From Macrostomum lignano (lineage: Eukaryota), in the NCBI GenBank assembly GCA_002269645.1, contig NIVC01000431.1, forward strand, positions 1 through 54,266: a DNA stretch of 54,266 bases, written 5' to 3'. The translations under genes were made by a program, and so were the position numbers. This document shows positions 1 through 25,426 of this stretch, one piece after another; the first letter of the stretch is position 1, and each line of letters opens with the position of its first letter. The notes under the pieces were generated by a model. The model saw only the letters and a program-made list of their open reading frames with translations. It was not told the origin of the DNA and did no database searches.

Positions 1-684
1 TGAGTCAGGGTGTATTAAAGTGAAGGTTGAAGGTAAGGTAAAGGTGAATGTTAAGGTGAGTCAGGATGAGTTAAGGTGAGTCAAGAGGAGTTAAGGTGAG
101 TCAGAATGGGTTAAGGTGAGTCAGAATGGGTTAAGGTGATTCAGGATGATTTAAAGTGAGTCAGGATGCGTTAAGGTGATTCAGGATGATTTAAGGTGAG
201 TCAGGATGGGTTAAGGTGAGTCAGGATGGGTTAAGGTGAGTCAGAGTGAGTTAAGGTGAGTCAGGATGAGTTAAGGTGAGTCAGAGTGAGTTAAGGTGAG
301 TCAGGATGAGTTAAGGTGAGTCAGGATGGGTTAAGGTGAGTCAGGATGAGTTAAGGTGAGTCAGGATGGGTTAAGGTGAGTCAGGATGAGTTAAGGTGAG
401 TCAGGATGGGTTAAGGTGAGTCAGGATGAGTTAAGGTGAGTCAGTGAGTTAAGGTGAGTCAGGATGAGTTAAGGTGAGTCAGGATGGTTAAGGTGAGTCA
501 GGATGAGTTAAGGTGAGTCAGGATGGGTTAAGGTGAGTCAGGATGAGTTAAGGTGAGTCAGGATGGTTAAGGTGAGTCAGGATGAGTTAAGGTGAGTCAG
601 AGTGAGTTAAGGTGAGTCAGGATGAGTTAAGGTGAGTCAGGATGGGTTAAGGTGAGTCAGGATGGGTTAAGGTGAGTCAGGATG
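1..684. repeat. Minisatellite, ~20-bp unit GAGTTAAGGTGAGTCAGGAT, cut by the window start
   Basis: About 30 near-identical tandem units read directly; degenerate at 1-60. Confidence 0.97.
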
Positions 685-1512
685 AGTCCGACTGAGTCTA
701 TGTTGAGGGTGTTCACTCTAATGCAACAGAAGAGTATAGTCACTTTAGGCAGCCACAATACTGTAAATAAATTTTTATACACAAGTTTTATCCAAAGCTT
801 TACGAGCTACCTGCACCAATTAAAGCGCACTGATAAGCAACCAAATTTTTTAATTTTTAATTAAAGCCATAATCTTAAACTTCCTGTACATGCCAACATC
901 TTGAAAAAAAGAATTTTTGCAATAATTCTTTTCTTGTAAATAAAAGTAAACTAAGGCGGCTCTGTGCTTATTGATGTTTGTCTGGAGTCCAGAGGTTTAT
1001 TATTTTGCTCTTAGCTAATCTGGCATCTTACCAAACAGTTTCTTAAACCGATTCCTTTAATCGATTGTTTTGAGTAAGTTGGTGATAAAATTTAAAACTG
1101 CGATTGTCAAAGCAACCAATCTAAAATCAGTTAATTATATGAAGCAGAAAAATCATCACATCGATAAAAAATTAGGATTTACAAAATTTAGCCAGGAAAC
1201 AGTAAGTAGGTAGCATTAATATTGTAGTTGCAACTATTTAAATTAATGATAACATTACAATAGGAAAATCATATAAATGACTAATTATAAATACCCGCAA
1301 GCAGACGGTCGGAAGTTAACATTAACGTCGTTTGTAGCGACGCAACAAAATTTTAGTTGGTGTCTTTCCTGGTTAAATTCACCCAATTTTTTGTGAAGAT
1401 TTTGTACAAACTAGCACCCAATGGGGAGGGATTTTCGGTCGGGTCCAGGGGTGGGTCAGAAGCAGGTCAAGGCAGGTCACAAGTCAGAAGTCACGCGTAG
1501 GGGTCAGGTCAG

Positions 1513-3302
1513 TCACACTCGTCGCTTGATGCCGAAATCCTCGAAGTCCAGCATGGCGTCTTCCTCCTTGGAGACGTGCAGGATTCTTCGTTGCAGGCCG
1601 ATGCTGGCCGGCTTAAAGTTCTCTCCGTCGTTGGCCTCCTTGATGGATTTGACGGCTTCCACGGTCTGAGGAATTTTTTCAATTGGTTTTGGTTGCATTT
1701 CGTAAAAAACCATAAACATTTAATGTCAGGTATACTCTACTGACAAAAGTAGAAATGAAAACATTTTTTCGAGAATTTTCGTAAAAATCTATAGATGTTT
1801 CATGCAAGAGATACTCTACTGAAGAAAGTAGAAATGGAAACATTTTTCGATAACTTTTTCTACCAACAGTAAACATAAAAGCATTTTATGCATTTTAGGT
1901 TTTTGCATAGATCAAATTATGTGAGCTTTTTCTCACCCAGTCGAAGACGGCGAATGCGGCCGGACTCTGCAGGGCCATCTCGCGCCTGTCGATGCCGCTG
2001 AGAATCTGCTGACTGCGCGCGGCGATGCGCGGATCAACGCTGGTAGCGTCGAAGCCACCATTGGCGAGGCGTTCGACGCCCTTCAGCAGCGGCTGGCAGC
2101 GCTTCCATTTCTGGAGGGAATTCATTGAAATGGGCGCGCTTGTTGTCAGTGAGAGGCTTCATCACTGATTTGAAGAGGGAGAATCTGCAGTGCGCACTTC
2201 GATCTTAAACTAATTGCATTTCATTTGCTTCCCGAATTCCCTCCATTTCTCTACCGGAATCCCCTCCATTTCTCTACCGGAATTCCCTCCATTTCTCTAC
2301 CGGAATCCCCTCCATTTCTCTACCGGAATCCCTCAATTTGTCTCCATGAATTCCCTCCATTTCTCTACCGGAATCCCTCCATTTCTCTCCATGAATTCCC
2401 TCAATTTCTCTACCAGAATTCCCTCCATTTCTCTACCGGAATTCCCTCCATTTCTCTACCGGAATCCCCTCCATTTCTCTACCGGAATCCCCTCCATTTC
2501 TCTACCGGAATTCCCTCCATTTCTCTACCGGAATCCCTCAATTTGTCTCCAGGAATTCCCTCCATTTCTCTACTGGAATCCCTCCATTTCTCTACTGGAA
2601 CCCCTCCATTTCTCTACCGGAATCCCTCAATTTGTCTCCAGGAATTCCCTCCATTTCTCTACCGGAACCCCTCCATTTCTCTACTGGAATTCCCTCCATT
2701 TCTCTACCGGAATTCCCTCCATTTCTCTACCGGAATCCCCTCCATTTTTCTACCGGAACCCCTCCATTTCTCTCCATGAATTCCCTCCATTTCTCTACCG
2801 GAATTCCCTCCATTTCTCTACCGGAATCCCCTCCATTTTTCTACCGGAACTCCCTTCATCTACGCCTGGCCAAGTCCCAAGCTGCTGCTGCAGCCAGTCA
2901 AACGCTCACCCTGGTCCGTTTTTCATAGTTGCCAGCCAGCAGCAGCAGGGCCCGCACAGTTTTGTGCACCGACTCCACCGGTCGCTGGTAGGCCCGAAGC
3001 TCCAGCAGGCTGCGCGCTGTCATCATCGACTGCTGCTGTTGCTTCTTTTGCATGTCAACGCTGTTCAACTTCCGTTCGCGTTCGATCAGCTCGTCAGCTT
3101 CTTCCAGCTCTGAGCGCAGCATCAGCCGCTGATTGTCTGTCAGACTCTCCGACTTCACCTGCTCCACCAGCTGGGTCAGCCGGCCGACACTGCGATACTT
3201 CTTCGATCGGCTGATGGCCGAGCGGAGGACTGCGGAGTATGAGCGGGTCTTGCTGCAGACAGACAGACAGACAGACAGACAGACGGACAGACAGACGGAC
3301 AG

Positions 3303-3344
<42 letters not shown>

Positions 3345-6300
3345 GGACAGACAGACAGACGGACAGACAGACGGGCAGACAGACGGGCAGACAGACAGAC
3401 AGACAGACGGACAGACAGACAGACAGACAGACGGGCAGACAGACGGGCAAACAGACGGGCAGACAGACGGGCAGACAGACGGGCAGACAGACGGACAGAC
3501 AGACGGGCAGACAGACGGGCAGACAGACGGGCAGACAGACAGACAGACAGACGGGTAGACAGACGGGCAGACAGACGGGCAGACAGACGGGCAGACAGAC
3601 GGGCAGACAGACGGACAGACAGACGGACAGACAGACGGACAGACAGACGGGCAGACAGACGGGCAGACAGACGGACAGACAGACGGGCAGACAGACAGAC
3701 AGACAGACGGACAGACAGACAGACAGACAGACGGGCAGACTCACTTTTCCGCTGCTCCAGAGCGTGCAGTGTCAGCTTGGCCTCCTTGAGCTTCTTCACC
3801 TCGCGCTCCTTCAGCATGATCCGCTCGGCAGCGGCCTCGGTCTCGGAGATGGCATCGCCAATTCTGTCGGCGTTGCGCGGCTTGGCCAGCAGGGCGGAGT
3901 CGAGCTCGGCAAAGCGCAGCTTCAGCTGCTCCCGCCGCGGCGAAGTCTTGGAACCTCCGGCGCCCTGCTGTTTGGCCGTTGGCTGGCCTCTGCCCTGCGA
4001 TTGTTCGATAGAGAAAAAAGCCATCAGCTGAGATTTTAACTATAAAAGCTTTTCTCGTAAAACTGTCACTCACGGTAAAGCTACTCACAGTAGTCACTGC
4101 TCTACCGGGCGACACACCACCAGAAGGCCGAGGCGATCTGACGGGCGGAAGCGTTTTCTGCTTCGAAGAATGAGAAGCAGCAACTGGCTGCTCCTGTGGC
4201 TGCTTTGTTGGCTTCCTTTGATCTTTAGCGGCTTGTGCCTCGTCAGCTGCGAAAGCTGCCGGTTGAGCCTCCCCGGCTGGGGTAGCTTCCGGTTGAGCCT
4301 CCTCGGCTGGAGCAGCTTCCGGTTGAGTCTCCTCGGCTGGGGCAGCATCCGGTTGAGCCTCCTCGGCTGGGGTAGCTTCCGGTTGAGCCTCCTCGGCTGG
4401 GGTAGCTTCCGGTTGAGCCTCCTCGGCTTGAGCGGCTTCCGATTGAGTCTCCTCGGCTGGGGCAGCTTCCGGTTGAGCTTCATCAGTCACTGGCTGCGCA
4501 TCATCGGCTGGGGTAGCTTCCGGTTGAGCCTCCTCGGCTTGAGCGGCTTCCGGTTGAGTCTCCTCGGCTGGGGCAGCTTCCGGTTGAGCCTCCTCGGCTT
4601 GAGCGGCTTCCGGTTGAGTCTCCTCGGCTGGGGCAGCTTCCGGTTGAGCTTCATCAGCCACTGGCTGCGCATCATCGGCTGGGGTAGCTTCCGGTTGAGC
4701 CTCCTCGGCTGGGGCAGCTTTTGGTTGAGCTTCATCAGCCACTGGCTGTGCATCATCGACTGGAGCATCTTCCGGTTGAGCCTCATTTTTTGGGATAGCT
4801 TCCGGTTGAGCCTCATCAACCACTGGCTGCGCATCCTCGGCTGAAGCAGCTTCCGGTTGAGCCTCGGCTTGAGCGGCTTCCGGTTGAGTCTCCTCGGCTG
4901 GGGCAGCTTCCGGTTGAGCTTCATCAGTCACTCGCTGCGCATCATCGGCTGGGGTAGCTTCCGGTTGAGCCTCATCAACCACTGGCTGCGCATCCTCGGC
5001 TGAAGCAGCTTCCAGTTGAGCCTCCTCGGCTGGGGCAGCTTCCGGTTGAGCATCGTCGGCTGGGGCAGCTTCCGGTTGAGCCTCATCTTTTGGGGTAACT
5101 TCCGGTTGAGCCTCATCAGCCACTGGCTGCGCATCCTCGGCTGGGGTAGCTTCCGGTTGAGCCTCATCAGCCACTGGCTGCGCATCCTCGGCTGGGGTAG
5201 CTTCCGGTTGAGCCTCATCAGCCACTGGCTGCGCATCCTCGGCTGGGGCGGCTTCCAGTTGAGCCTTCTCGGCTGGTGCAGCTTCCGGTTGAGCCTCATC
5301 GGCTGGGGCTGCTTCAGGTTGAGCTTTTTCTATTGGGGCAGCTTCCGGTTGTGCCTCATCAGCCACTGGCTGCGCACCCTTGGCTTGGGTAGCTTCCGGT
5401 AGAGCCTCCTCAGCTGGGCCAGCTTCTGGTTGAGCCTCATCGGCTGGGGCAGTTTCCGGTTGAGCCTCCTCGGTAGAGACAGCTTCCGGTTTAGCCTCAT
5501 CGGCAGAGGCAGCTTCTGGTTTAGCCTCATCGGTAGAGGCAGATTCCGGTTGAGCCTCATCGGTAGAGGCAGCTTCCGGTTTAGCCTCAGCGGCAGAGGC
5601 AGCTTCCTGTTTAGCCTCATCGGTAGAGGCAGCTTCCGGTTGAACTTCATAGACTTGGGCAGCTTTCGCTTGATCCTCACCAGCCACTGGCTGCGCATCC
5701 TCGGCTGGGGCAGCTTCCGGTTGACCATCATTAGCGGAGGCAGCTTCTGGTTTAGGCTCATCGGTTGAGGCAGTTTCTCGTTGAGCCTCATCAGCAACTG
5801 TCTGCGCATCCTCGGCTGGGGCAGCTTCCGGTTTAGCTTCTTCGGTTGAGGCATCTTCTAGTTTAGCCTCCTTGGTCAAGGCAGCTTCCGGTTGAACCTC
5901 ATCAGCTTGTGAAGCTTCTTGCGCTTGAGCCTCATCGGCTTGAGCAGCTTCTTCTGGTTGAGCGTCATCGGCTTGAGCAGCTTCTTCTGGTTGAGCGTCA
6001 TCGGCTTGAGCAGCTTCTGGTTGAGCCTCATCGGCTTGAGCAGCTTCTGGTTGAGCCTCCTCGGCTGGAGCAGCTTCCTTTTGAGCATCATCGGATTGAG
6101 CAGCTTCTTCTGGTTGATCGTCATCGGCTTGAGCAGCTTCAGATTGAGCCTCATCGGCTTGAGCAGCTTCCTTTTGAGCATCATCGGGTTGTGCAGCTTC
6201 CTTTTGAGCATCATCGGATTGAGCAGCTTCTTCTGGTTGAGCCTCATCGGCTTGAGCAGCTTCCGGTTGAGCCTCACTGGCTTGAGCAGCTTCCGGTTGA

Positions 6301-8682
6301 GCCTCACTGGCTTGAGCAGCTTCCGGTTGAGCCTCATCGGCTGGAGCAGCTTCCTTTTGAGCATCATCGGATTGAGCAGCTTCTTCTGGTTGATCGTCAT
6401 CGGCTTGAGCAGCTTCCTTTTGAGCATCATCGGATTGAGCAGCTTCTTCTGGTTGATCGTCATCGGCTTGAGCAGCTTCCTTTTGAGCATCATCGGATTG
6501 AGCAGCTTCTTCTGGTTGATCGTCATCGGCTTGAGCAGCTTCAGATTGAGCCTCATCGGCTGGAGCAGCTTCCTTTTGAGCATCATCGGGTTGTGCAGCT
6601 TCCTTTTGAGCATCATCGGATTGAGCAGCTTCTTCTGGTTGAGCCTCATCGGCTTGAGCAGCTTCCGGTTGAGCCTCACTGGCTTGAGCAGCTTCCGGTT
6701 GAGCCTCACTGGCTTGAGCAGCTTCCGGTTGAGCCTCATCGGCTGGAGCAGCTTCCTTTTGAGCATCATCAGATTGAGCAGCTTCTTCTGGTTGATCGTC
6801 ATCGGCTTGAGCAGCTTCCTTTTGAGCATCATCGGATTGAGCAGCTTCTTCTGGTTGATCGTCATCGGCTTGAGCAGCTTCAGATTGAGCCTCATCGGCT
6901 TGAGCAGCTTCCTTTTGAGCATCATCGGGTTGTGCAGCTTCCTTTTGAGCATCATCGGATTGAGCAGCTTCTTTTGGTTGAGCCTCATCGGCTTGAGCAG
7001 CTTCCGGTTGAGCCTCACTGGCTTGAGCAGCTTCCGGTTGAGCCTCATCGGCTTGAGCAGCTTCCGGTTGAGCCTCATCGGCTTGAGCAGCTTCCGGTTG
7101 AGCTTCATCGGCTTGAGCAGCTTCCGGTTGAGCATCATTGGCTTGAGCAGCTTTTTCTGGTTGAGCGTCATCGGCTTGAGCAGCTTCCGGTTGAGCCTCA
7201 TTGGCTTGAGCAGCTTCAGGTTGAGCCTCATCGGCTTGAGCAGCTTCCTTTTGAGCATCATCGGCTTGTGAAGCTTCCTTTTGAGCGTCATCGGCTTGAG
7301 CAGCTTCCGGTTGAGCCTCATTGGCTTGAGCAGCTTCCTTTTGACCATCATCGGATTGAGCAGCTTCTTCTGGTTGAGTGTCATCGCTTTGAGCAGCTTC
7401 TTTTTGAGCGCCATCGGCTTCAACAGCTTCCTGTTGAGCGTCATCGGCTGGGGCAGCTTCCTTTTGAGCCTCATCGGCTTGAACAGCTTCCTGTTGAGCG
7501 TCATCGGCTGGGGCAGCTTCGTTTTGAGCCTCATCGGCTTGAACAGCTTCCTGTTGAGCGTCGTCGGCTGGGGCAGTATCAGGTTGAGCGTCATCAGCTG
7601 GAGCAGCTTCCTTTTGAGCATCATCGGATTGAACAGCTTCCGGTTGAGCCTCATTAGCTTGATCAGCTTCCGGTTGAGCCTCATTAGCTTGAGCATCTTC
7701 AGCTTGGGAATCATTCTCTTGTGCGTTGTGCTCTTGATAAGCTTCTAATTTAGCTTCATCAGCTTGAGCAGCTTCTTTTCGCTGAGCGTCATCGCCTTGA
7801 GCAGCTTTCGGTTGAGCATCGTCGGCTGGAGCAGCTTCCGGTTGAGCATTGTCGGCTGGAGCAGCTTCTGGTTGAGCATCGTCGGCTGGAGCAGCTTTTG
7901 GTTGAGCCTCATCGGCTTGAGCAGCTTCTAATTGCTTAGTCCCTCCAAGGGGCTCCGCAGCTGGTTCAGGTGCCGTGTCCTGTCTTACTGACACTCTGTC
8001 GCCTTCACTACGGCCGTTCTTAGGGCTCTGTTGACGGATGAAAAAGTTTGGAAGTGACAAATATGTTTATAGTCGAGTACATCGATAGGCTCGTACTATG
8101 GAGTAGACAAGTAGATTTGATTGGCTGTTATTATGCTCGTAAATAGTGCAAAAATATAACGTCGGTATCAAATGCGTATGAAATAATAAAGCGGTGATGT
8201 AAACAGGCCTTCCTTAAAGTGTGAGCAGATCGCTGACTTTCGCGCCACCCTGTGTGAGCGCGTGTGCATGAGTGCGTGCCTGCGTGCAACATTGGCGAGC
8301 TCGTGTGTGCTCAGGAGTGAGCGGAGACGATGTCGCTGAAGGCATGTTACCGGGGTGCCCACGGCCCTTTTGTACTCGTAATAATAATTATTATTATTAT
8401 TATGCTAGTAATTCATTTTTTGGTAACTCTGTAAGACTCAGTAATGAAAGACTCAGTTATGAAATGTTTTGAGCACAAGTATTCAACTTCATACGGTTAT
8501 AATTGTGCAAATTTGGCTACAGAATTCACGCTAGCCAGCAGGTAACCTATTGAAGTTAGTGTTGAAGCGCTTGCAAACTTGCTATGTCGGTAATGCATTT
8601 TTCAGAGAAAACCAGCAATGAAAGCGAAGCAACTCACCGCCGCCCGCTGCTCAGCAGCCAACTCAGTCGAGGCTTCTGTCAT
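1513..8682 (-). CDS. Gene A: ~1626-aa protein, giant acidic repeat plus hillarin-type C-terminal helical module
   Basis: Hand-spliced exons 8682-8638, 8027-4089, 3994-3745, 3229-2910, 2110-1937, 1665-1513. All introns are GT-AG with compatible phases (0,0,1,0,0); total 4881 nt = 1627 codons. The C-terminus (ELRAYQRP...LLLAGNYEKRTRKWKRCQPLL...DPRIAARSQQIL) is clearly paralogous to gene B. The first exon (MTEASTELAAEQRAA) is the least certain. Confidence 0.8.
2225..2850. repeat. Intronic minisatellite, ~22-bp unit CCCTCCATTTCTCTACCGGAAT(T/C)
   Basis: Tandem units fill most of the gene A intron 2909-2111. Confidence 0.95.
3256..3740. repeat. Intronic (CAGA)n / CAGACAGACGGG compound microsatellite
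   Basis: Fills the gene A intron from just after the GTGAGT donor (3744) to near the acceptor. Confidence 0.97.
4250..7910 (-). repeat. Coding tandem repeat, 30/33-bp units encoding AAQADEAQPE / AAPAEEAQPE-type decapeptides
   Basis: Open frame kept across ~3.6 kb; unit lengths are multiples of 3; higher-order blocks recur. Confidence 0.95.
8246..8359 (+). repeat. Dispersed ~110-bp element, copy 1
   Basis: CACCCTGTGTGAGCGCGTGTGCATGAGTGCGTGCCTG...GGGGTGCC aligns by eye with 18024-18148 and with the reverse complement of 38565-38631. Confidence 0.75.
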
Positions 8683-9878: not shown

Positions 9879-12800
9879 CTATAATTTGACATTGTTGGAC
9901 CTCGTCTTGCCAATTCCGGTCCGTAATTTTGAACTGGCAACGGAGGCGCCGCTAACGCTGCCAGTCTCCGAGTCGGAATTGTACTTGGCGTCCTCCGCGG
10001 GCGTCACGCCCAGAATGCGGGCCTGCTGTCGCACGCTGGCCGGCTTGAAGCGGTCCGGCGGAGTGGCTCGCTCTATTGTTGCAACAGTTTTCACGCCCTG
10101 TGGATGTAAAATATAAGATTAAGGCGTGTCTTTGCTAAGGCCCGTGCCGATCTTGAACTTGGAAATGCTGGCAATAAATATTCTAAATATTTAATCATCC
10201 TTTGGTAAAGAAACAAAAATTTTCTGAATTTCTGAATACTAAACTAACAAACCCGGAGAAAATTCACGAATCCTGAATTAACAAACGCTGAGAAAATAAA
10301 CAAATCCTAAATTAAAAAAAACTCGGCAGGAAATTCACGAACTCTAAAGAACAAACGCAGTGAAAAATCAGAAACCTTAAGTTAACAAACTTCGAGACAT
10401 TTCACGAATCCTAAATTAACTACTGTGAAGGAAATTCACGAATCCTATATTAACAAACCCGGAAAAACTCACGAATCTTGAATTTAAAAAATTCAGAGGA
10501 ATTAACAAACACGAAAGTAACGTCTTGAAGCTGTGAAGCCTTCGTTCCTCACCCATTCATAGAAAGCGAAGGCGGCAGCACTGCGCTGTTCAACCTCTTG
10601 AGCGTCGATGCCGGCTAGGATCTGCTTGCTTCTGGCAGCGATGCGCGGATCGACGCGGGTCACGTCCAGCGCGTCCATGTCGTGCAGGATGGTGCGGAGC
10701 AGCGGCTGGCAGCGCTTCCATTTCTGTCTTTTGGGAAACGGGGTGGATATAGTTTCAAACCGGTTCGTTTGGGGCAGTACATAATTTTTTTTCCGAGAAG
10801 CAGAGAAGAACACATGCAAAGACGTTAAATTGACAAGTCAAGTTTAGAGGCCTGATCTCTTTAGGTCTGTAAGAACTTGCATGAGGATATGTAACACATT
10901 TTGGATGCAGGATCTGTATGAGCTAGGATTCGTAGGACTTTAAGAACCTTGTATGACCTGTAGGATTTCGTACGGTCTGAAGGATCTGTGTGACCTGTAG
11001 GATTCACAGGACCTTCAGGATTTGTATGACTTGTAGGATTCTTAGGACTCGAAGGATCTGTTTGACCTGTAGGATTTCGTAGAACTCGAAGGATCTGTAT
11101 GACCTGTAGGATTCGTTAGGACTCGAAGGATTTGTATGACCTGTAGGATTTCGTACGGTCTGAGGATCTGTGTGACCTGTATGATTTCGTACGGTCTGAG
11201 GGATCTGTATGACCTGTAGGATTTCGTACGGTCTGAGGATCTGCGTGACCTGTAGGATTTCTTACGATCTGAGGATCTGTGTGACCTGTAGGATTTCATA
11301 CGGTCTGAGGATCTGTGTGACCTGTAGGATTTCATACGGTCTGAGGATCTATGTGACCTGTAGGATTAGTAGGACTCGCGAGGATCTGTATGACCTGTAG
11401 GATTCGCTAGGACTCGAAGGATCTGTATGACCTGTAGGATTTCGTACGGTCTGAGGATCTGTGTGACCTGTATGATTTCGTACGGTCTGAGGATCTGTGT
11501 GACCTGTATGACTAGTAGGACTCGAAGGATCTGTATGACCTGTAGGATTTCGGTATGACCTGTAGGATTTCGGTATGACCTGTAGGATTTCGGTATGACC
11601 TGTAGGATTTCGGTATGACCTGTAGGATTTCGGTATGACCTGTAGGATTTCGTACAGTCTGAGGATCTGTGTGACCTGTAGGATTTCGTACGGTCTGAGG
11701 GATCTGTATGACCTGTATGACTAGTAGGACTCGAAGGATCTGTATGACCTGTAGGATTTCTTAGGATCTGAGTGACTCTAAATTAGTATCTAAAGAATCA
11801 GTCGAATCCCTCGATTTCTTAAAGGACCAAAAGTGAACAACAGTAAAAACTGGCCGCCAACTCGCCCTAGTCCGCTTCTCGTAGTGTCCGGCCAGCAGCA
11901 GCACAGCCTGCACGGCACCGTGGACCGCGTCCTGCGGACTGGAGTACCGTCTGAGCTCCGTGAGGCTGCGCGAGTTCGCTCCCAGCCGGTGCCGCGGCTG
12001 CCTCGCACGCCGATTGTAACGCCACATCGCCTGTCGAGCTGCCGTCGCCTCCGCCGATACCAGCTTGGCCGCAACCGACGTCTTTGACATCGACGTAGCC
12101 GAAGTTGAGGTCAGGCCGAGATCGTCGAGCTCGCTTAGTAGGCGACGAAGCCGATGAACATCTGTCTGTTCGACAGCGCGCTGCAGATCTACATGTAAAA
12201 GCGTAGAACGTTTCAGAAGTGTCCCGAATCTATGATTATTATCCAATTATAGGTAGCTAAATACGCCACGCAAAAATATACGTGGAAAGCTAAATTTACC
12301 TACTGAATCCAACTGCACGATTAATTTAGCTGAGTTGCTAACAGGAACCAATTAGCTAAAGGACCCAATGGCGTACGCAGGAATTTTAATTGGACTGAGC
12401 GCCCCAATTTTTCAGTGTCTTGGTTGACACCTCAATCTTCTAGGTGGGCGCCCCTGTCTTCTGGTGGGTGCCCCTGTCTCTTGGTGGGCGTCCCTGTCTC
12501 TTGGTGGGTGTCCCTGTCTCTTGGTGGGTGTCCCTGTCTCTTGGTGGGCGCACCTGTCTCTTGGTGAGTGCCCCTGTCTCTTGGTGGGCGTCCCTGTCTT
12601 TTGGTGGGTGCCCTTGTCTTTTGGTGGGTGTCCCTGTCTATTGGTGGGCGTCCCTGTCTTTTGGTGGGTGTCCCTGTCTATTGGTGGGCGTCCCTGTCTT
12701 TTGGTGGGTGTCCCTGTCTATTGGTGGGCGCCCCTGTCTTTTGGTGGGTGTCCCTGTTTATTGGTGGGCGCCTATAAGCGCTAGATTATTCAAAACAACC

Positions 12801-15800
12801 CCTGGACGCCTCAGTACAGCCTTGCCAAGCCTCCAAATTTCATCACATGTCCCTGCACCAAACTCTGACTTCGTTGATCACTGACCTTTACCCATGGGAA
12901 ACTTCTGGACCTTCAACAGGTGGCACCAGGATACTCTACTTGACACTCTATTTCGAATTTCTCTAGTTTCGCTGAGCAAACCTCAACTGCTGGGCTCATT
13001 CACTCACCAACTTTGAGATCGATAGCAGCCAGCACTAAGCACGCCTTGCCAGCTAGCTTCCGTGACACCGCCGCTCCCTGCTGATCCTTCAATGCCGCTT
13101 CTATCATGTCCGAATTCGCTGCCGCTATCGCCTCTTCCAGACGCTGACACGCCGTGGTGTCGGCCGCAGCAGCCGCGGCAGATGCAGCTTCCTCGTCGCC
13201 CTCGCCCTCGCCGTCGACTCGCCATCGCCGCCAGCGTCGCCGTCGCCGTTGCTCAATCAGCCTTACTGTCTCCAGTCGACTCTGACGTCGAGCTAATCGA
13301 TTTGCCGCCTCATCCAGGAAGTCGCTGGCTCCGATCTCCGAAGTGGTTATCGACCCGAAAACTCTGACAGGATGGCAGCGGAGCACTCGCCATTCGCCGT
13401 CATCATTCCGGGCCCCGGCTGAGCGCAACAGTTTTAGCAAATAGTTGCCAGGCAGGCAAAATCGACAAGAAATTGAGCTTCCATCGTCAGACAAAGTTGC
13501 AACGGCTCCCTCTGCCGGCACCAAATCAGCCTCGGCCTCGGCCATCTCGCCGTCATGTCGCCGTCGTTCCCAACCTCGAGGGCGCCAGGCCACGCGGAGC
13601 AGCTCGACACGTTCAACTGTCTCCTTGACCGTATCGACCGGTACAGACAGTTCTGCGGCAGTTGTCGCTTTGTACGGCTCGCCAAAGACGTCTTTGGACG
13701 CGTCTGACGCTGCCGACTCCACCAGGCGCTGCCAGTTCGGCTGCGGCTGCTGCCGCCAGGCGGCTCCGTCGGCGTCGTCGGAGCCGCAGTCAGCTGCCAC
13801 CAGGAACTGACAGACGGGCCGGTCGCGCACACGCAACACCAGAGCGAATTGGCCGCCGCCGGCCGGTGCGTAAAAATGTACACCGAGTCTGGACAGGTAG
13901 GCCGTGCCGGGTGGGGTCAGACGATCACCCTGCTGGTAGACACGGCAGGTGAGCCTCAGGTAGCCATCACCGTCAATGTGCATCAATGCGACGGCCGCTT
14001 CACCATTTGATGCCGATAGTTCACCGTTGGCAATGTCGCAGCCGAGCTCTAGACTGCCACCTGTAGCGGTGTTTCTCGTTGATATGTAACTGTGATTTCG
14101 TAGTGTGGTCTTCATTAAGGATACTCTCTAAAGTATTGTGAGAATTGTGGTCTAATTGGTACTGATCTAGCTGTGGGAACTGTGGCCTAATTGGTACTGA
14201 TCTAGCTGTGGGAACTGTGGCCTAATTGGTACTGATCTAGCTGTGGGAACTGTGGTCTAATTGATACTGATCTAGCTGTGGGAACTGTGGTCTAATTGAT
14301 ACTGATCTAGCTGTGGGAACTGTGGCCTAATTGGTACTGATCTAGCTGTGGGAACTGTGGCCTAATTGGTACTGATCTAGCTGTGGGAACTGTGTGGTCT
14401 AATTGGTACTGATCTAGCTGTGGGAACTGTGGTCTAATTGATACTGATCTAGCTGTGGGAACTGTGGCCTAATTGGTACTGATCTAGCTGTGGGAACTGT
14501 GTGGTCTAATTGGTACTGATCTAGCTGTAAGGACTGTGGTCTAATTGGTACTGATCTAGCTGTAAGGACTGTGGTCTAATTGGTACTGATCTAGCTGTGG
14601 GAACTGTGTGGTCTAATTGGTACTGATCTAGCTGTGGGAACTGTGGTCTAATTGTAAGGTCAAAAGGGTCAAACCTGAACTGTCACTCCTGGGCGGCCCA
14701 AACTCGGACAGCTCGCCAGACGGGAACCCGCAACCGCCGTCGCCGCTCCCGCACCCTACTGGGCAATGCAGCGCAAAGCCAACAAAGCAATCGTCATATT
14801 GATAGTCATCGTCTTCCGTTAACAGCCGAATCTCCAAGTAGAATTTTCCTGGCCAAGGCGGCTCCACCTTGAATTTCAACACGCCGTCTCGATCGGTGCG
14901 AATTGGCCGGCTGACGCTGCAGTCGCCCGGCTGACGGCCGTCGATGGTGTTCGACAGACAGCGAAGGACGCTCGTGTAGCGACAGGGCAGGTGACGCCTT
15001 TGTTGAGTCTCTCGGAGCTCCAACTCGAGCAGCTCGCCCGGCCGGCCAAGGACAACATTCCACGGCCAGTTTAGGACGGCTAATCGGCCAGAGTGGCGCT
15101 CGAACTCCCCAGCCGTGCCGCCGGCGAGGTAAACGGGCATCCGGTCGAACTCCGACTTGGTGAGCGGTCGGGCGAGCAGCTGCCAGACGGCTGGTGAATC
15201 GGTACTTTTATCGTCGCTATTAGCATCAAGCTGGCAGGGCAGGTGGGTGATGACGAACTGCTCCGGGTCGGTCAGGAAGAAGAACTCCCTGGAGTCTGTG
15301 TCGGCCGCCATCGCCGCCCAGCCAATGTCAACCAGTCGCCATTCGCCTCGCACAAAACAGGCAAACCAGCTGCCGCCCACCGGGGTGCGAAAGCCGGGGG
15401 CCAAGCCGGCACCTTTCTTGTACCCGAGAACTCGTTGGAACGGAATGCCAGCCTCGCTGCGTGGAGATGCGAAAGTTGGTTTTCTACTTAGTCAGATGAT
15501 CAAACAGCTATTTTAAGCATTTCCACAATCTTAAACTGAAGTCACGTTAATTACCAACCTGAGCAGTTTGGCAAACACCTCAGAGTGTCTGTCCTCTCCC
15601 TTGGAGTCAGTCGATTCCGCCATCCGTCGCAGAGTCCTATAGACCGTCAGTTGAAGTTCCGACTCCGTCTTAACGAGTCTCCCAGGCCTGTTGCTGACTG
15701 CGCACACAAACCCGAACGCCGCTCTCAGTCGTTCGAGGTCGCCGCTGCATCGTCTGTACAGACGTTGGCACAAGCTTGCCCAGCTGTCATCTGGCTGCGG

Positions 15801-16055
15801 CAACTCCTCGGCTGACTGAGCGTCAATTGTCACAATGTCCGCTGGCTGTTTTTGAAACTGCAGTAGCAGCTCAGCCTTGGTGCGTCGCGGCGGGAACGGA
15901 GGCGGTGGTGGCTGCCGGACGTCGTCAAGCTGCTGCTGGTCCTCTCTGGGCGGCTGTCCCAGCTTGCGCTGGCTTGTAGCCAGGCTCTGCGGCGTCGGGT
16001 ACTGGCCTGACTGCAGCCGCTCACGAATAGAACTCGAGTGGTCTAATGCATAGTC
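9879..16055 (-). CDS. Gene B: hillarin / kyphoscoliosis-peptidase (KY)-like protein with a degenerate transglutaminase-like domain, at least 1014 aa, 5' end unresolved
   Basis: Exons 16055-15559, 15456-14675, 14060-13008, 12188-11866, 10723-10553, 10097-9879; phases compatible; 3045 nt. Motifs AGIPFQRVLGYKKGAG, GEWRLVDIGW, EFFFLTDPEQFVITHLP and WQLLARPLTKSEFDRMP are typical of the KY/hillarin/Cyk3 family. One donor is GC (11865). Confidence 0.85.
10215..10490. repeat. Degenerate ~40-bp tandem repeat (AATTCACGAATCCTAAATTAACAAAC core) in a gene B intron
   Basis: The core recurs about six times with divergence. Confidence 0.7.
10900..11770. repeat. Intronic minisatellite, ~38-bp unit GATCTGTGTGACCTGTAGGATTTCGTACGGTCTGAG, with a shorter sub-array near 11540-11650
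   Basis: Read directly; lies in the gene B intron 11865-10724. Confidence 0.95.
12443..12775. repeat. Intronic minisatellite, 20-bp unit GGTGGGTGTCCCTGTCTYTT
   Basis: About 16 tandem units in the gene B intron 13007-12189. Confidence 0.95.
14145..14652. repeat. Intronic minisatellite, ~35-bp unit GGTCTAATTGGTACTGATCTAGCTGTGGGAACTGT
   Basis: About 14 units in the gene B intron 14674-14061. Confidence 0.95.
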
Positions 16056-16369
16056 CTGCGGAGATGTTTAATTAGTTAGACTAATTAGCCTAAAATTACC
16101 GATGGAGTCATCAAACAAAAGCAATTTCTACTAGATGGTAGCTATTTTTCTAAATCGATTTGAAGGCTGGTTTAAGCAAATCTATTTGATACTTGATGGG
16201 AAATGTTTTATAAAGATTAAACCAAGTTCCTCAAAACAATCGTAGCAGCTTTTCATAGCAAAAATAAATTTACACCGTCGTCAAAGATTACAGTCGTCGA
16301 AACTCGACTGAGGACAAGGCCCGCCTGAAGACCCTAAAAAAAGCCAAAAACGTTTGCTCGCAATGAACC

Positions 16370-17455
16370 AGAGGCGTTCTCTTGCGACGAACCAGAGACG
16401 TTCACTCGAGACGAACCAGAGACATTGACTCGAAACGAAATCAGAGACGTTCACTCGAGACGAACCAGAGAAATTCACTCGAAACGAAATCAGAGACGTT
16501 CACTCGAGACGAACCAGAGACATTCACTCGAGACGAACCAGAGACGTTCACTCGAGACGAACCAGAGAAATTCACTCGAGATGAAATCAGAAACGTTCAC
16601 TCGAGACAAACCAGAGACGTTCCCTCGAGACGAACCAGAGAAATTCACTCGTAACGAAATCAGAGACGTTCACTCGAGACGAACCAGAGACATTCACTCG
16701 AAACGAAATCAGAGACGTTCACTCGAGACGAACCAGAGACATTCACTCGAGATAAAATCAGAGACGTTCACTTGAGACGAAATCAGAGACGTTCACCCGA
16801 GACGAACAAGACGATCGATCACCAGACGTTCACTCGAGACGATCACCAGACGTTCACTCAAGACGAAATCAGAGACGTTCACGTACTCGAGACGAACCAG
16901 ACGATCGATCACCAGACGTTCACTCGAGACGATCACCAGACGTTCACTCAAGACGAAATCAGAGACGTTCACGTACTCGAGACGAACCAGACGATCGATC
17001 ACCAGACGTTCACTCGAGACGATCACCAGACGTTCACTCAAGACGAAATCAGAGACGTTCACGTACTCGAGACGAACCAGACGATCGATCACCAGACGTT
17101 CACTCGAGACGATCACCAGATGTTCACTCAAGACGAAATCAGAGACGTTCACGTACTCGAGACGAACCAGACGATCGATCACCAGACGTTCACTCGAGAC
17201 GATCACCAGACGTTCACTCAAGACGAAATCAGAGACGTTCACGTACTCGAGACGAACCAGACGATCGATCACCAGACGTTCATTCGAGACGATCACCAGA
17301 CGTTCACTCAAGACGAAATCAGAGACGTTCACGTACTCGAGACGAACCAGACGATCGATCACCAGACGTTCACTCGAGACGATCACCAGACGTTCACTCG
17401 AGACGATCACCAGGCGTTCACTCAAGACGAAATCAGACACGTTCACTCGAGACGA
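16370..17455. repeat. Composite minisatellite: ~24-bp GAGACGAACCAGAGACGTTCACTC units changing into a 90-bp higher-order unit
   Basis: The 90-bp period is shown by the 30-aa periodicity of ORF 16772-17533. Confidence 0.95.
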
Positions 17456-19132: not shown

Positions 19133-22100
19133 TCACATTTTCGACTCAGCTGTAGACGCATTGCCAGATCCTTGATTCGTCACGTGACCATTGCCGTTTG
19201 CGTGCTCTGCGACCTCCTGTAGCTTCTGTTGCTCATGTAGCTGCTGATGCTCTGCTTCTGGGTCACCAGTCAGAGCCGACTCAACCCGCCTGAGCGCTGC
19301 TATGCCTGTCAGCCAGACATTGGATCGGCAGAACCCTGCCATAGTTACCAACGCCAGGACAAAAGCGCTGCACAATAGCCAACCGATGCAGAAGCACTGG
19401 ATGCTGAGCGGTTGCAGCAGCAGACTGCACGGCAGGTACACAGCGTCGGCATAAATCTGGTGCAAGCTGCCGCATCGAACTACGGAGCTGAGGAATTTGG
19501 CGCCGATGTGTTTGCCAATCTGCACTGACCCAGCCAGAGTGCCCAGCATGATGTGCCGCTTGTACTCCGAGGCCGCCGTCTGCACCCACAGAGTTCGGTT
19601 CAACAGGTACACGTCCACAGCCTGCGGTGGTGGATGCAGTTTTTCTTAGAATGCGTTTTGATTTGTGAATCTCGTTTAAATACTCGTTCGAGCTGGGATA
19701 CAATGGACTATGGAATTCTGAGGACCCGGTGGAATGCTCTGAGGATCCGATAGAATGCTGAGGACCCGATAGAATGCTGAGGACCCGATAGAATGCTGAG
19801 GACCCGATGGAATATTGCTGAGGACCCGATGGAATATTGCTGAGGACCCGATGGAATGCTCTGAAGATTCGATGGAGTGCTGAGGACCCCCGATAGAATG
19901 CTGAGGACCCGATGGAATGCTGAGGACCCAATGGAATGCTGAGGCTCCGATGGAATGCTGAGGACCCGATAAAATGCTGAGGACCCGATGGAATGCTGAG
20001 GACCCGATGGAATGCTGAGGACCCGATGGAAAGCTCTGAGGACCCGGTGGAATGCTGAGGACCCGAAGGAATGCTGAGGACCCGATGGAATGCTGAGGAC
20101 CCGATGGAATGCTGAGGACCCGATAGAATGCTGAGGACCCGATGGAATGCTAAGGACCTGATGGAATGCTGAGGACCCGATGGACTGCTGAGCATCCGAT
20201 GAAATGCTGATGACCCGATGGAATGCAGAGGATCCGATGGAATGCTTAGGGACCGATGGAATGCTTAGGGACCGATGGAATGCTTAGGGACCGATGAAAT
20301 GCGTAGGGACCGATAGAATGCTTAGGGACCGATGGAATGCAGAGGACCCGATGGAATGCTTAGGGACCGATGGAATGCTTAGGGACCGATGGAATGCTTA
20401 GGGACCGATGGAATGCGTAGGGACCGATAGAATGCTTAGGGACCGATGGAATGCTTAGGGACCGATGGAATGCTTAGGGACCGATGGAATGCTTAGGGAC
20501 CGATGGAATGCTCTGAGGATCCGATGGAATGCCGAGATTCTAGTCGTTGTAACTGCTAATACAAGTGTATACATGATACTGCTGAATGCTTCATACCTGA
20601 TTTCGCACAATCACTTCGTCAATGACAGCGTTGACGTCTTTCTCAGTTTCCAGAGTCAGCATCATGCCGCCGACCTCGTTAGCGTAGCGTCGCAAGTAGT
20701 CGACCGCAAGCAGACTACGGGCTGCGTTTCGAGAATTCATCGTCGACAACTGCTTGACGCTGCTCTCCGATTCTGGCAGCAGTTTGTCCACGCGCTCGTT
20801 GAGTCGGCTGAACTCATTTAGCTGGACCTCGAGCTCCGCTGCCGAGACTGCTCGAGGCTTGAGCCTTCGTTGTAACTCGACGAAATCGGTGGACGTGTAG
20901 GTGCGAAAGAACGGCTTGAGGTTCTGCAGGTCCTCCGTTACTTTCTCGTCGCGCAGCTGGTCCAAGTTGACTGCCTGCATCTCTCTGATCAGAATGGCGA
21001 GTCCTTTGGCCTGGAACTGCTTAGTCTCGGCTGTCTTATCCAACACTGCTTCATCGATGTATCGATCGGCCCCCAATGCAGTTAGCAGTGGCAGATTGCT
21101 TTTGCACGAGTGCTGCAAGGCGTACTGAATCGAACCCACAGCCGTGATGGGGATTTCAGTGGCGTTCGGATCGCCAGCGCTCCGGGCGCGCAGCTCCGCA
21201 AGAACGCCGTTCACTTCCGGCACGAGAAATTCGTCCGCCTTGGACTGATTCCCCGACGACTGGGTGTCCCACAGGTAGCGACAGGCCTCGGCCTGCACAA
21301 AAGCAGTTGCTGTAGACATTGCCGCGTTGAGAACGATGGCCAGTCCAATAAGTATGAAGCTGCATAAGTACAGGGTGCCAACAAAGTATCTGGTCCGGGA
21401 ACCAGTTTTTATTGACTTAAGCACGAACGGGGTAACCCCAGTCGCCAGGGCAATCGTCGAGATGAAGAACAGCATCAGAATAAACAGGGTGATACCGAAT
21501 CTTGCACTCTCTGGACCGGATGTCCAGCTGGTGTACGAGTTGGAGAACTGTTTCCGGAGTTTTCCAAGACCTTCTCTACCTGCGCTAAGCTGAACTTCCA
21601 TCTCGATTAGCTGCGACTCAATCGAATCGATGAGGAAGGCTGTGGAGTTTAGCTCCCGGTCGAATACGGCGCTAATGTTGGCGTTCATCTCGTCTCCGAC
21701 ACGAAGCTTTTGTCGGCGAATCTCCTGCTGACGTGCTGGTGTGTTACCGCTACCGTCCAGGGCGCCCACGAGCTGGTAGACGAGCTTCGTGATGTTCTTG
21801 GCGTGCGTCTCCAAGCTGCTTGACTGTCTCTTGTCGCTTGACGAAGATGCGTTGACTGTTGTCCAGTCATTTCGAACTGCCTGCACCGCTAAAACGAGCT
21901 GCATTGCCGCCTGACTATGATTCGAGCACAGGTTGTCGGTACCGTTGTAGTACCTCCGGCAGGTGTCTTCGTAAGCAAAGAACTGCACATTTTTCAGATC
22001 ACTCAGAGCCGACTGCAACATCTCCATGGCGATGCTGAGATTCTTTCCCGAATAGTAAAAATCGCTCATTCGACGAAGCAGCTCGTCGGAGACGGCCAAC

Positions 22101-23882: not shown

Positions 23883-24430
23883 GGGGGGTGTTTCTCGAAA
23901 CTCACGTAAGTTCTATGGTAAGTTAGATCGTAAGAAAGAAATTTACGTGTAGCGTAAGTTTGCTCGTAAGACGCTCAAAACTCCTCAAAACTTCTCAAAA
24001 CTCACTTAGACTTTGCGTGGCTTACGCTGTTCGTAAGTCGTATCTGAAACGAAAAGTTGCATGTCTATGGTCATAAATCTGTAAATATCTTTACTTTGTC
24101 TATCGTAAGTTGCTTTCGAGAAAGACCCACCTTCGATAAAGTTTAACTTGACTTGGCTTGACTAAAGCTTCACGTACTATGCGATTAGTGTTTAAGTGCG
24201 TCTTACGACTGATACCGAGCAGTCGTAGGGTTAAGATCAACCTTACGAAAGACCATAGACATACGAACGTTTCGAGAAACAGTCTTTTGCGCAAAGTTAC
24301 GAACTCGTAAAGTTGCGATCAATCTTACGCATAGCTAGAGTACTTGCGAGCCCTTCGAGCAACCCGTAAGTGTAGCTTACCCAACTTACGTCTATGGTCG
24401 ATCGTAAGTTGCTTTCGAGAAAGACCCCCC
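23883..24430. mobile_element. Non-autonomous TIR element, Harbinger/PIF-like MITE
   Basis: Left end GGGGGGTGTTTCTCGAAA; right end TTTCGAGAAAGACCCCCC (reverse complement GGGGGGTCTTTCTCGAAA). Many internal CGTAAG/CTTACG motifs. No clear TSD. Confidence 0.6.
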
Positions 24431-24469
24431 AAAACTTTAGGGCGAATTTTGTAGGAATTTTCAGTCCCT

Positions 24470-25262: not shown

Positions 25263-25426
25263 CTTTAAATCTAACAGGATGTTGTCAATCCCTGTAGCAA
25301 GACGTTCCTTTGTCCTGGTTACGTTTCATAAGTCCCCCTGCAACTGGTGCTGTCAGGGCCTTTCTGTATATCAGTATGTTGTTTAAAAAACCTTACAGGC
25401 TTAATAAAGGACTCAACTCAAACGAA

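What the first reader, a model, noticed from the sequence alone, without database searches (positions are those of the whole stretch)
1513..3229. Shared C-terminal module looks like a stand-alone dynein stalk-head microtubule-binding domain
Seen: ELRAYQRPVESVHKTVRALLLLAG...KWKRCQPLL...FDATSVDPRIAARSQQIL...EMALQSPAAFAVFDWTVEAV, preceded by a coiled-coil-like helix. Recalled pattern of the dynein heavy-chain MTBD: E(L/I)+S+xxPPxxVxxVxxAVxxLLG...W...+xxL...FDxxxI...V...SxAAxxLxxWVxA. Inference: both genes may encode microtubule-binding proteins that use an MTBD-like fold outside a motor, plausibly in cilia or sperm.
Basis: inference. Interest (0 to 1): 0.72.

Follow-up and report, generated by a model that had tools for sequence, protein, structure and literature searches.

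The report
Dynein microtubule-binding head without a motor
Two neighbouring flatworm genes each end in a small helical domain that is a true relative of the microtubule-gripping tip of the dynein motor but sits on non-motor proteins, which shows that this "foot" is a reusable module whose job outside dynein has never been tested.

Summary
The window is Macrostomum lignano DNA. Two tandem minus-strand genes share a spliced C-terminal module that is 50% identical between them, with introns at the same places.

The single sequences do not reach Pfam PF12777. A profile of 68 relatives matches only dynein heavy-chain microtubule-binding domains (MTBDs) among solved structures, with a best E-value of 7e-14 over the whole domain. 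Of those 68 relatives, 24 hit PF12777 on their own. An AlphaFold model (pLDDT 92) finds dynein MTBDs as its top 14 Foldseek matches (TM up to 0.74).

There is no AAA+ motor. The return strand of the stalk (CC2) is cut short and replaced by a conserved tail.
- Gene B is a hillarin/KY-like inactive transglutaminase scaffold.
- Gene A is about 1,300 residues of acidic 10-residue repeats plus a basic C-terminus.

The same module occurs in spiralians, tunicates, amphioxus, chytrids and protists. More distantly, it occurs in the radial-spoke proteins RSP2 and, apparently, EFCAB5.

Homology and fold are well supported. Microtubule binding is inferred, not shown. The radial-spoke relatives are the main caution, because there the fold may dock proteins rather than tubulin. 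I found no paper describing the family. I file it as a new variant of a known kind.

The parts
1513..1665 (-). Gene A, last coding exon. It holds the end of the MTBD-like domain's last helix (TVEAVKSIKE...), the conserved tail FKPASIGLQRRILHVSKEEDAMLDFEDFGIKRRV, and the stop codon (TGA, 1513-1515).
   Evidence: The splice is confirmed by P0001. The tail motif PA(S/N)xxxQ(K/R)xI(L/F) is conserved in relatives. The tail is modelled with pLDDT 90-98.
1937..2110 (-). Gene A exon encoding the middle of the MTBD-like domain (KWKRCQPLLKGVERLANGGFDATSVDPRIAARSQQILSGIDRREMALQSPAAFAVFDW).
   Evidence: It holds the family's near-invariant W, S and W.
2910..3229 (-). Gene A exon: helical segment including the long helix that leads into the domain (CC1-like), then the first helices of the MTBD-like domain from about 3011 downward (SLLELRAYQRPVESVHKTVRALLLLAGNYEKRTR).
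   Evidence: AlphaFold secondary structure.
3745..3994 (-). Gene A exon: basic helical or coiled-coil region (GRGQPTAK...REQLKLRFAELD...LHALEQRK).
   Evidence: Predicted helices 2-16, 22-36 and 43-75 of the 278-residue model.
4089..8027 (-). Gene A giant exon: about 1,313 codons, mostly about 117 copies of a 30-bp unit encoding an acidic A/E/Q/D/P-rich decapeptide (such as EAQPEAAPAD), pI about 4. Choice of reading frame is inferred.
   Evidence: TRF periods of 30/60/90 bp. This frame has 0 stops, against 8 and 132 in the other two minus-strand frames. It joins in phase to an ATG exon upstream and to the next exon downstream. Database models P0001 and P0003 use another frame.
8638..8682 (-). 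Gene A candidate first coding exon (ATG; MTEASTELAAEQRAA) with a GTGAGT donor, in phase with the acidic frame. Inferred; no RNA evidence.
9879..10097 (-). Gene B last coding exon: end of the MTBD-like domain, tail motif (FKPASVRQQARILGVTPAEDA...) and stop codon.
10553..10723 (-). Gene B exon: middle of the MTBD-like domain (KWKRCQPLLRTILHDMDALDVTRVDPRIAARSKQILAGIDAQEVEQRSAAAFAFYEW).
   Evidence: The exon boundaries match those of gene A.
11866..12190 (-). Gene B exon (5' boundary approximate): helical region and start of the MTBD-like domain (SLTELRRYSSPQDAVHGAVQAVLLLAGHYEKRTR). It is followed by an intron with a GC donor (AGG|GCGAGT).
13003..16055 (-). Gene B upstream coding exons (about 15559-16055, about 146xx-15456, about 13003-14064; boundaries approximate, 5' end unresolved). 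They encode a hillarin/KY-like transglutaminase-like core that lacks the catalytic Cys and His, plus a probable KY-type Ig-like region.
   Evidence: tblastn with P0006, P0009 and P0034 hits 15135-15452. Alignment. Weak Ig-like_KY hit, E 0.043. Splice sites.

Best explanation
Both genes encode non-motor proteins whose C-terminus is a homologue of the dynein heavy-chain microtubule-binding domain. It is a bundle of about 120 residues and six short helices, led into by a long helix that corresponds to the outgoing strand of the dynein stalk (CC1). Dynein's long return strand (CC2) and its AAA+ ring are absent. In their place is a conserved tail of about 35 residues, PA(S/N)xxxQ(K/R)xI(L/F)...EED.

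The most likely role is a passive anchor that needs no ATP and holds the rest of the protein on microtubules or tubulin. With no ATPase to slide the stalk helices, affinity would be fixed, or set by the tail, rather than cycled.

In gene B the cargo is a catalytically dead hillarin/KY-like transglutaminase-fold scaffold. In gene A it is a 1,300-residue acidic repeat 'brush' joined to a basic C-terminal region, a charge layout like that of classical MAPs (an acidic projection plus a basic binding part).

Shown: homology, predicted fold, gene structures, domain architectures, taxonomic spread. Inferred: microtubule binding, fixed affinity, the role of the tail, and the reading frame of gene A's repeat exon.
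For: Homology:
- The profile of the 3 Macrostomum paralogues finds 200 proteins at E<=1e-3 among 1.8 billion. The 150 listed are 89-2,303 aa, so none is of dynein length.
- The profile of 68 diverse modules hits 74 PDB sequences. All 60 listed are dynein heavy chains, matched at their MTBD over profile positions 5-120, best 7.4e-14.
- 24 of 68 members hit Pfam PF12777, best 2.6e-6.
- The leave-out profile scores gene A at 1.4e-24 and gene B at 9.4e-28.

Fold:
- AlphaFold2 model of the 127-residue module: pLDDT 92.2, pTM 0.85.
- The top 14 Foldseek PDB matches are all dynein MTBDs. Examples: 6rzb_C, TM 0.74/0.64, rmsd 3.0 A over 120 columns; 3err_A, TM 0.70. Unrelated hits have TM about 0.2.

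No motor:
- Gene models of 6 exons and 1,626 aa for gene A.
- KY-like exons for gene B.

Conserved architecture:
- Seven of eight long relatives scanned are Transglut_core + Ig-like_KY + helical region + C-terminal module; in one of the seven only Ig-like_KY was detected.
- They come from Macrostomum, Patella, Helobdella, Lottia, Pinctada, Owenia, Pecten and others.

Consistent with binding an acidic surface:
- The module's pI is 9.9 (gene A) and 9.6 (gene B).
- Arg/Lys is kept in 85% of family members at the Arg of dynein's E-[IV]-R in helix 1, and there are basic positions around the helix-3 Trp.

Definition of the dynein MTBD and its binding site: PMC6629372.
Against: - No binding data exist for any member.
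- The single sequences do not reach Pfam PF12777. The 3-sequence profile reaches dynein-2 only at E 0.45.
- Foldseek E-values are weak (0.035 and worse) even though TM-scores and ranks are clear. The model is also not independent of dynein structures, because AlphaFold was trained on them.
- Contact residues are only partly kept. Where yeast dynein has the first Lys of KK in helix 1, 70% of family members have Asp/Glu, gene A has Thr-Ala and gene B has Ala-Asn. K3299 is a tubulin-proximal residue in mouse dynein.
- In the 278-residue model only the MTBD part superposes on dynein stalk structures (rmsd 24-30 A overall), so there is no dynein-like stalk.
- The closest non-dynein relatives with solved structures are radial-spoke proteins that lie away from the microtubule wall.
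Confidence: 0.5

Rival explanations
1. The module has the dynein MTBD fold but serves as a protein-protein docking piece inside a larger cytoskeletal or axonemal assembly, without touching the microtubule lattice. Its relatives in radial-spoke proteins appear to work this way.
For: - hhalign of the Macrostomum modules against the modules of Dpy-30/GAF proteins named EFCAB5: probability 98.9%, E 2e-17.
- The profile of those modules hits Chlamydomonas RSP2 (7jrj_I, residues 460-601, E 1.1e-9) and a 1,509-residue chain of the bovine sperm 96-nm repeat (9fqr_Xl, E 4.6e-9) alongside dyneins.
- RSP2 lies in the spoke neck under the head (PMC3494852).
- EFCAB5 lies in the RS3 stalk and bridges to RGS22 (PMC11779644).
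- The helix-1 Lys pair of dynein is not kept.
- Hillarin, the named relative of gene B's scaffold, is reported to act through septins (PMC3081291).
Against: - I could not see whether the MTBD-like parts of RSP2 or EFCAB5 are resolved, or what they touch. Neither chain appeared among the 50 Foldseek matches listed for the model.
- Gene A and gene B lack the Dpy-30 and GAF domains that place those proteins in spokes.
- The module is strongly basic, which suits tubulin.
Confidence: 0.35
2. The module binds another acidic polymer or peptide rather than the microtubule lattice. Candidates are septin filaments or free or polyglutamylated tubulin tails, working together with the dead transglutaminase-fold domain.
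For: - Hillarin-septin link.
- Ciliary transglutaminase-like domains have been proposed to bind glutamylated tubulin (PMC3495828, cited in PMC3623635).
- Gene B's transglutaminase-like core lacks the catalytic Cys and His but keeps the Asp, like other hillarin-like proteins.
Against: - There is no direct evidence.
- Canonical hillarin (Lingula) and vertebrate KY lack the module altogether, so septin binding by hillarin does not depend on it.
Confidence: 0.1
3. The match is spurious, or the sequences are dead fragments of a dynein gene.
For: The single-sequence Pfam and PDB searches are negative.
Against: - Profile E-values reach 7e-14, with only dyneins matched.
- Fold match.
- Intact spliced reading frames with conserved intron positions in two paralogues that are only 50% identical.
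- All near-invariant family residues are kept.
- Relatives occur across phyla in fixed non-dynein architectures.
- No AAA+ match was seen in any of the window proteins scanned.
Confidence: 0.03

Closest known systems
Dynein heavy-chain microtubule-binding domain (Pfam PF12777 'MT'; structures such as 3ERR, 6RZB, 6KJN)
   Same: About 115-120 residues with six short helices. Shared signature E-[IL]-R-x-[YM]-x-x-P-P...V...A...LLG...W...Q...S-x-A-A...Y-x-W. The family profile matches it at 7e-14 over its full length. The predicted structure superposes at TM 0.64-0.74. A long helix leads in, like CC1.
   Different: It is not inserted in an AAA+ ring. CC2 is reduced to a stub and followed by a family-specific tail. 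The helix-1 Lys pair is replaced. The proteins carrying it are 89-2,303 aa rather than more than 4,000.
Hillarin / kyphoscoliosis peptidase (KY) family: transglutaminase-like core plus KY-type Ig-like domains
   Same: Gene B's upstream exons align with the transglutaminase core of spiralian KY-like proteins. Seven of eight long relatives scanned are Transglut_core + Ig-like_KY, or Ig-like_KY alone. Some are named 'hillarin-like' or 'kyphoscoliosis peptidase' by NCBI or UniProt.
   Different: Lingula hillarin, fish KY and Limulus KY-like proteins have no MTBD-like module, so the fusion defines a subgroup. The catalytic Cys present in fish KY is missing in gene B and in the other invertebrate members. 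Gene A has no KY part at all.
Radial-spoke proteins RSP2 (Chlamydomonas) and EFCAB5 (mammalian sperm RS3)
   Same: Their C-terminal regions are matched by the profile of the Dpy-30/GAF-type MTBD-like modules (E 1.1e-9 and 4.6e-9). That profile is related to the Macrostomum modules at hhalign probability 98.9%. These too are non-motor proteins.
   Different: They carry Dpy-30 and GAF (and EF-hand) domains, which are absent here. They sit in the spoke neck or stalk. The identity of chain 9fqr_Xl as EFCAB5 is my inference from its length and its match to an 'EFCAB5'-named chytrid protein; the table labels it otherwise.
Small stand-alone proteins in tunicates and molluscs already auto-named after dynein (Ciona savignyi 'Dynein heavy chain coiled coil stalk domain-containing protein', 220 aa; Haliotis 'cytoplasmic dynein 2 heavy chain 1-like', 356 aa)
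   Same: The same module, preceded only by helical sequence.
   Different: No KY scaffold and no acidic repeats. The names come from automatic annotation, and I found no study of them.

Membership tests
Dynein MTBD (PF12777 / structural MTBD) | Significant sequence-profile match to dynein MTBDs | tested here: met
   Met at the family level. The 68-sequence profile hits only dynein MTBDs, best 7.4e-14, and 24 of 68 members hit PF12777. Gene A and gene B belong to that family at 1e-24 and 1e-27. The single sequences alone do not hit PF12777.
Dynein MTBD (PF12777 / structural MTBD) | Compact bundle of six short helices H1-H6 | tested here: met
   Prediction only. AlphaFold pLDDT 92.2. The top 14 Foldseek matches are dynein MTBDs, TM up to 0.74.
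Dynein MTBD (PF12777 / structural MTBD) | Sits at the tip of a long antiparallel coiled-coil stalk (CC1/CC2) | tested here: not met
   A CC1-like helix of about 34 residues is present. After the last helix only about 10-12 residues continue before a different, conserved tail. The whole-region superposition on stalk structures has rmsd 24-30 A. Prediction only.
Dynein MTBD (PF12777 / structural MTBD) | Part of a heavy chain with six AAA+ modules | tested here: not met
   Gene A is 1,626 aa of repeats plus helices. Gene B has KY-like exons. No listed relative exceeds 2,303 aa.
Dynein MTBD (PF12777 / structural MTBD) | Binds the alpha/beta-tubulin intradimer interface through helices 1, 3 and 6 | not testable with these tools
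   Indirect evidence only. Basic pI. The helix-1 Arg is kept, but the Lys pair is replaced.
Hillarin/KY-like transglutaminase-fold proteins (gene B only) | Transglutaminase-like core | tested here: inconclusive
   tblastn similarity to the core of P0006, P0009 and P0034, E 3e-9 to 3e-11, and the alignment. There is no significant Pfam Transglut_core hit for the exon translations.
Hillarin/KY-like transglutaminase-fold proteins (gene B only) | KY-type Ig-like domain (PF23265) | tested here: inconclusive
   E 0.043, below the curated cut-off.
Hillarin/KY-like transglutaminase-fold proteins (gene B only) | Catalytic Cys-His-Asp triad | tested here: not met
   Cys and His are replaced and Asp is kept. 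The same loss of Cys is seen in the other invertebrate members, whereas fish KY keeps Cys and His.
RSP2/EFCAB5-type radial-spoke proteins | Dpy-30 motif and GAF domain that place them on the spoke | tested here: not met
   Present in P0086, P0109, P0113 and P0134. Not found in the scanned parts of gene A and gene B.
RSP2/EFCAB5-type radial-spoke proteins | Homologous MTBD-like module | tested here: met
   hhalign probability 98.9%, E 2.2e-17 over 101 columns.

The most novel reading that the evidence does not exclude
The dynein microtubule-binding head is not private to dynein. It is an old, mobile module found in several non-motor families: spiralian hillarin/KY-like dead transglutaminases, small tunicate and mollusc proteins, repeat proteins like gene A, and the radial-spoke proteins RSP2 and EFCAB5. 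In the spiralian branch it works as a static microtubule anchor that brings a tubulin-tail-recognising scaffold, or an acidic spacer, onto microtubules. This would also bear on how dynein acquired its head.
Probability: 0.35. Interest if true: 0.75.

Novelty: new variant of a known kind. Interest (0 to 1): 0.6.

Why it matters
The dynein MTBD is treated as a part unique to the motor, with its affinity governed by sliding of the stalk helices. A family of motor-less copies offers three things. First, natural 'locked' versions in which to study how the fold binds, or does not bind, tubulin. Second, a possible new class of microtubule-associated proteins in spiralians, tunicates and flagellated protists. 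Third, a handle on the unexplained C-terminal regions of the radial-spoke proteins RSP2 and EFCAB5. It also links the poorly understood hillarin/KY scaffold to the microtubule cytoskeleton. All of this can be tested with a bacterially expressed fragment of about 200 residues.

Tried and rejected
- **Direct Pfam scan** of both C-termini and gene B exons: no PF12777 hit, only noise.
- **Direct phmmer against PDB sequences:** noise.
- **Word-indexed homologue search with the single sequence:** only two Macrostomum proteins. With the family alignment it returned mostly short fragments.
- **Hillarin as a possible prior description of the module:** rejected for Lingula hillarin and for vertebrate and Limulus KY, which lack the module. 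I could not obtain the original leech hillarin sequence.
- **DRC7/CCDC135 as a lead,** because it has a transglutaminase-like domain: the papers read give no link to an MTBD, and it never appeared among the hits.
- **Codon usage to settle gene A's repeat frame:** inconclusive (log-odds 0.18 against 0.15; GC3 0.32 against 0.88; reference 0.69). Stop counts and splice phases decided it.
- **Exact-sequence look-up of P0001:** not on record.
- **Ten literature searches** found no description of a non-dynein MTBD family. The library holds open-access papers only.

Full report
**What is there**

The window is genomic DNA of the free-living flatworm Macrostomum lignano. A database protein of that species is 100% identical to the spliced C-terminus (P0001).

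The quoted peptides lie on the minus strand in three exons: 2910-3229, 1937-2110 and 1513-1665. They are joined by GT-AG introns in phase. A second copy lies upstream on the same strand, at 11866-~12190, 10553-10723 and 9879-10097. It is 50% identical in protein and its two introns sit at the same codon positions. This is therefore an old tandem duplication. A third paralogue (P0002, 52-56% identical) lies elsewhere in the genome.

**Gene models**

Gene A can be assembled into six exons, all with GTGAG-type donors and pyrimidine-rich AG acceptors:
- 8638-8682, a short exon with an ATG;
- 4089-8027, a giant exon;
- 3745-3994;
- 2910-3229;
- 1937-2110;
- 1513-1665, ending in the stop codon.

Together they make 4,881 nt and 1,626 residues.

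The giant exon is about 117 copies of a 30-bp unit. In the frame that joins both neighbouring exons it has no stop in about 1,320 codons. The other two minus-strand frames have 8 and 132 stops. In that frame it encodes an A/E/Q/D/P-rich acidic repeat of pI about 4. The remaining 298 residues have pI 10.0, and the module itself has pI 9.9.

The frame is an inference. Two database models use a basic frame for pieces of this region, and codon statistics do not decide between them.

Gene B's upstream exons (about 13003-16055) align with the transglutaminase-like core of spiralian KY-like proteins. Its 5' end is not resolved.

**Is the module a dynein MTBD?**

On their own the sequences do not reach Pfam PF12777 or any PDB sequence. 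A three-sequence profile reaches the MTBD of dynein-2 only at E 0.45, although the alignment already spans the whole domain.

An exhaustive HMMER search with that profile found 200 proteins at E<=1e-3. The 150 listed are 89 to 2,303 residues long and most carry the module near the C-terminus.

A profile of 68 diverse modules (A2) then matched 74 distinct PDB sequences. All 60 listed are dynein heavy chains, matched at their MTBD over profile positions 5-120. The best are yeast cytoplasmic dynein at 7.4e-14, DNAH6 at 9e-12, mouse dynein-1 at 2e-11 and dynein-2 at 1e-10. Of the 68 members, 24 hit PF12777 individually.

Gene A and gene B truly belong to this family. A profile built without the flatworm clade scores them at 1.4e-24 and 9.4e-28, and both keep the near-invariant E, Y, P, G, W, S and W positions.

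**Predicted structure**

AlphaFold2 with the 68-sequence alignment gives a confident model (pLDDT 92.2, pTM 0.85). Its 14 best Foldseek matches in the PDB are all dynein MTBDs. They include the microtubule-bound mouse domain 6rzb_C (TM 0.74 by query and 0.64 by target, rmsd 3.0 A over 120 columns) and the crystal structure 3err_A (TM 0.70). Unrelated hits have TM about 0.2. The Foldseek E-values are modest (0.035 and worse), and AlphaFold has seen dynein structures, so this agrees with the sequence evidence rather than being independent of it.

A second model covers the last 278 residues (pLDDT 89.9). It shows:
- several helices, then a 34-residue helix that leads into the module;
- the six-helix bundle, whose last helix runs on for only about a dozen residues;
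- two short, confidently placed helices formed by the tail.

Against dynein stalk structures only the MTBD part superposes; the overall rmsd is 24-30 A. So the outgoing strand of the stalk has a counterpart and the return strand does not. The tail carries a motif, PA(S/N)xxxQ(K/R)xI(L/F), that is conserved in spiralian relatives and absent from dynein.

**Who else has it**

Seven of eight long relatives scanned are Transglut_core + two or three KY-type Ig-like domains + helical region + C-terminal module; in one of them only the Ig-like domains were detected, and the eighth, a chytrid protein, has no Pfam hit. They come from Macrostomum, limpets, a leech, bivalves, an annelid, gastropods and a cephalopod. 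Sources name them 'KY-like', 'kyphoscoliosis peptidase', 'hillarin-like' or leave them uncharacterised.

Lingula hillarin, fish KY and Limulus KY-like proteins lack the module. In the invertebrate members, gene B included, the catalytic Cys of the transglutaminase fold is missing, and in gene B the His as well. They are binding scaffolds, not enzymes.

Other architectures exist:
- helical region plus module only: Ciona, 206-220 aa, one auto-named 'Dynein heavy chain coiled coil stalk domain-containing protein'; Haliotis, 356 aa, auto-named 'cytoplasmic dynein 2 heavy chain 1-like';
- a form with an apparent transmembrane segment in Phallusia;
- a 1,003-residue amphioxus protein;
- gene A's repeat form.

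**A more distant branch, and the main caution**

Chytrid, glaucophyte and other protist proteins with Dpy-30 and GAF (and sometimes EF-hand) domains also end in the module. One is named EFCAB5. Their modules relate to the Macrostomum modules at hhalign probability 98.9%, E 2e-17.

A profile of them hits dynein MTBDs (2.9e-11). It also hits Chlamydomonas radial spoke protein 2 (7jrj_I, residues 460-601, 1.1e-9) and a 1,509-residue chain of the bovine sperm 96-nm repeat (9fqr_Xl, 4.6e-9). I take that chain to be EFCAB5, from its length and its four-segment match to the chytrid 'EFCAB5' protein. The table's label for it looks shifted, like the label of a 4,583-residue chain there that is called a radial spoke head protein.

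RSP2 sits in the spoke neck under the head (PMC3494852). EFCAB5 sits in the stalk of RS3 and bridges to RS2 (PMC11779644). A protist protein with a FAP42-like N-terminus also carries the module.

But the best-placed ones are not on the microtubule wall.

**How it most likely works**

The dynein MTBD binds the tubulin intradimer groove, and its affinity is set by the register of CC1 against CC2, which the AAA+ ring drives (PMC6629372). Here there is no ring and no CC2.

The simplest reading is a static anchor: a basic six-helix head on a helical stalk stub, with the conserved tail taking the place of CC2 and fixing one state.

For tubulin binding:
- the fold itself;
- the basic charge of the module;
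- retention of the helix-1 Arg (R/K in 85% of members);
- basic residues around the helix-3 Trp.

Against an identical binding mode: where yeast dynein has the first Lys of its helix-1 KK pair, 70% of members have Asp/Glu and genes A and B have neutral residues. K3299 is tubulin-proximal in mouse dynein.

I put microtubule or tubulin anchoring at about 0.5. A protein-docking role like that implied for the spoke proteins gets about 0.35, another acidic partner such as septins or tubulin tails about 0.1, and artefact or pseudogene about 0.03.

**Novelty**

The fold is known. Its use outside dynein is flagged only by a few automatic names. Ten searches of the open literature found no description.

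I file it as a new variant of a known kind: not a member of the dynein heavy-chain family, since the defining stalk and motor are absent, but a homologue of its MTBD.

Noticed in passing
window 2234-2859, 3256-3740, 10909-11772, 12443-12768, 14137-14654: Nearly every intron of genes A and B is filled by its own minisatellite, with units of 23, 12, 36, 20 and 35 bp (14-40 copies, 84-93% matches). The units differ between introns.
   Followed up: partly
window 11860-11865: The gene B intron that follows ...HYEKRTR has a GC donor (AGG|GCGAGT). The matching intron of gene A has a GT donor (AGG|GTGAGC).
   Followed up: no
window 4089-8027: Gene A's 30-bp repeat array is almost stop-free in two minus-strand frames (0 and 8 stops), and one plus-strand frame has only 12 stops. 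Database protein models (P0001, P0003) read pieces of it in the basic K/R/L-rich frame, whereas splice phases and stop counts favour the acidic frame. Which protein is really made is unsettled.
   Followed up: partly
PDB chains 7jrj_I (residues 460-601) and 9fqr_Xl (residues 1385-1474), found through loci outside the window: Chlamydomonas RSP2 and a 1,509-residue bovine sperm radial-spoke chain (probably EFCAB5) appear to contain a dynein-MTBD-like domain. I did not find this stated in the papers read. Several molecule names for entry 9fqr in the search table look shifted; for example, a 4,583-residue chain is called 'Radial spoke head protein 9 homolog'.
   Followed up: partly
window 37315-38403 (-), 47181-47891 (-), 52597-53511 (+), 20591-22786 (-): Other genes in the window: a Headcase-family protein (E 8e-59), a Vta1-like protein (E 2e-30), a SAP-domain protein (E 2e-9), and a 731-residue open reading frame with no Pfam match.
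   Followed up: partly
window 50-687, 16365-17406, 24394-25386, 31693-33123, 40340-41514: Long tandem-repeat arrays outside the two genes keep several reading frames open and produce many spurious long ORFs. One example is the 20-bp unit at 50-687; another is the 24-90-bp units at 16365-17406.
   Followed up: no
L001 1-1052 and 10001-11062 (M. lignano contig NIVC01002652.1): The third paralogue (P0002) lies at a contig end, about 9 kb downstream of a 1,386-residue gene with a faint KY Ig-like signal. This hints at the same 'KY-like gene followed by an MTBD-like gene' layout as in the window.
   Followed up: no
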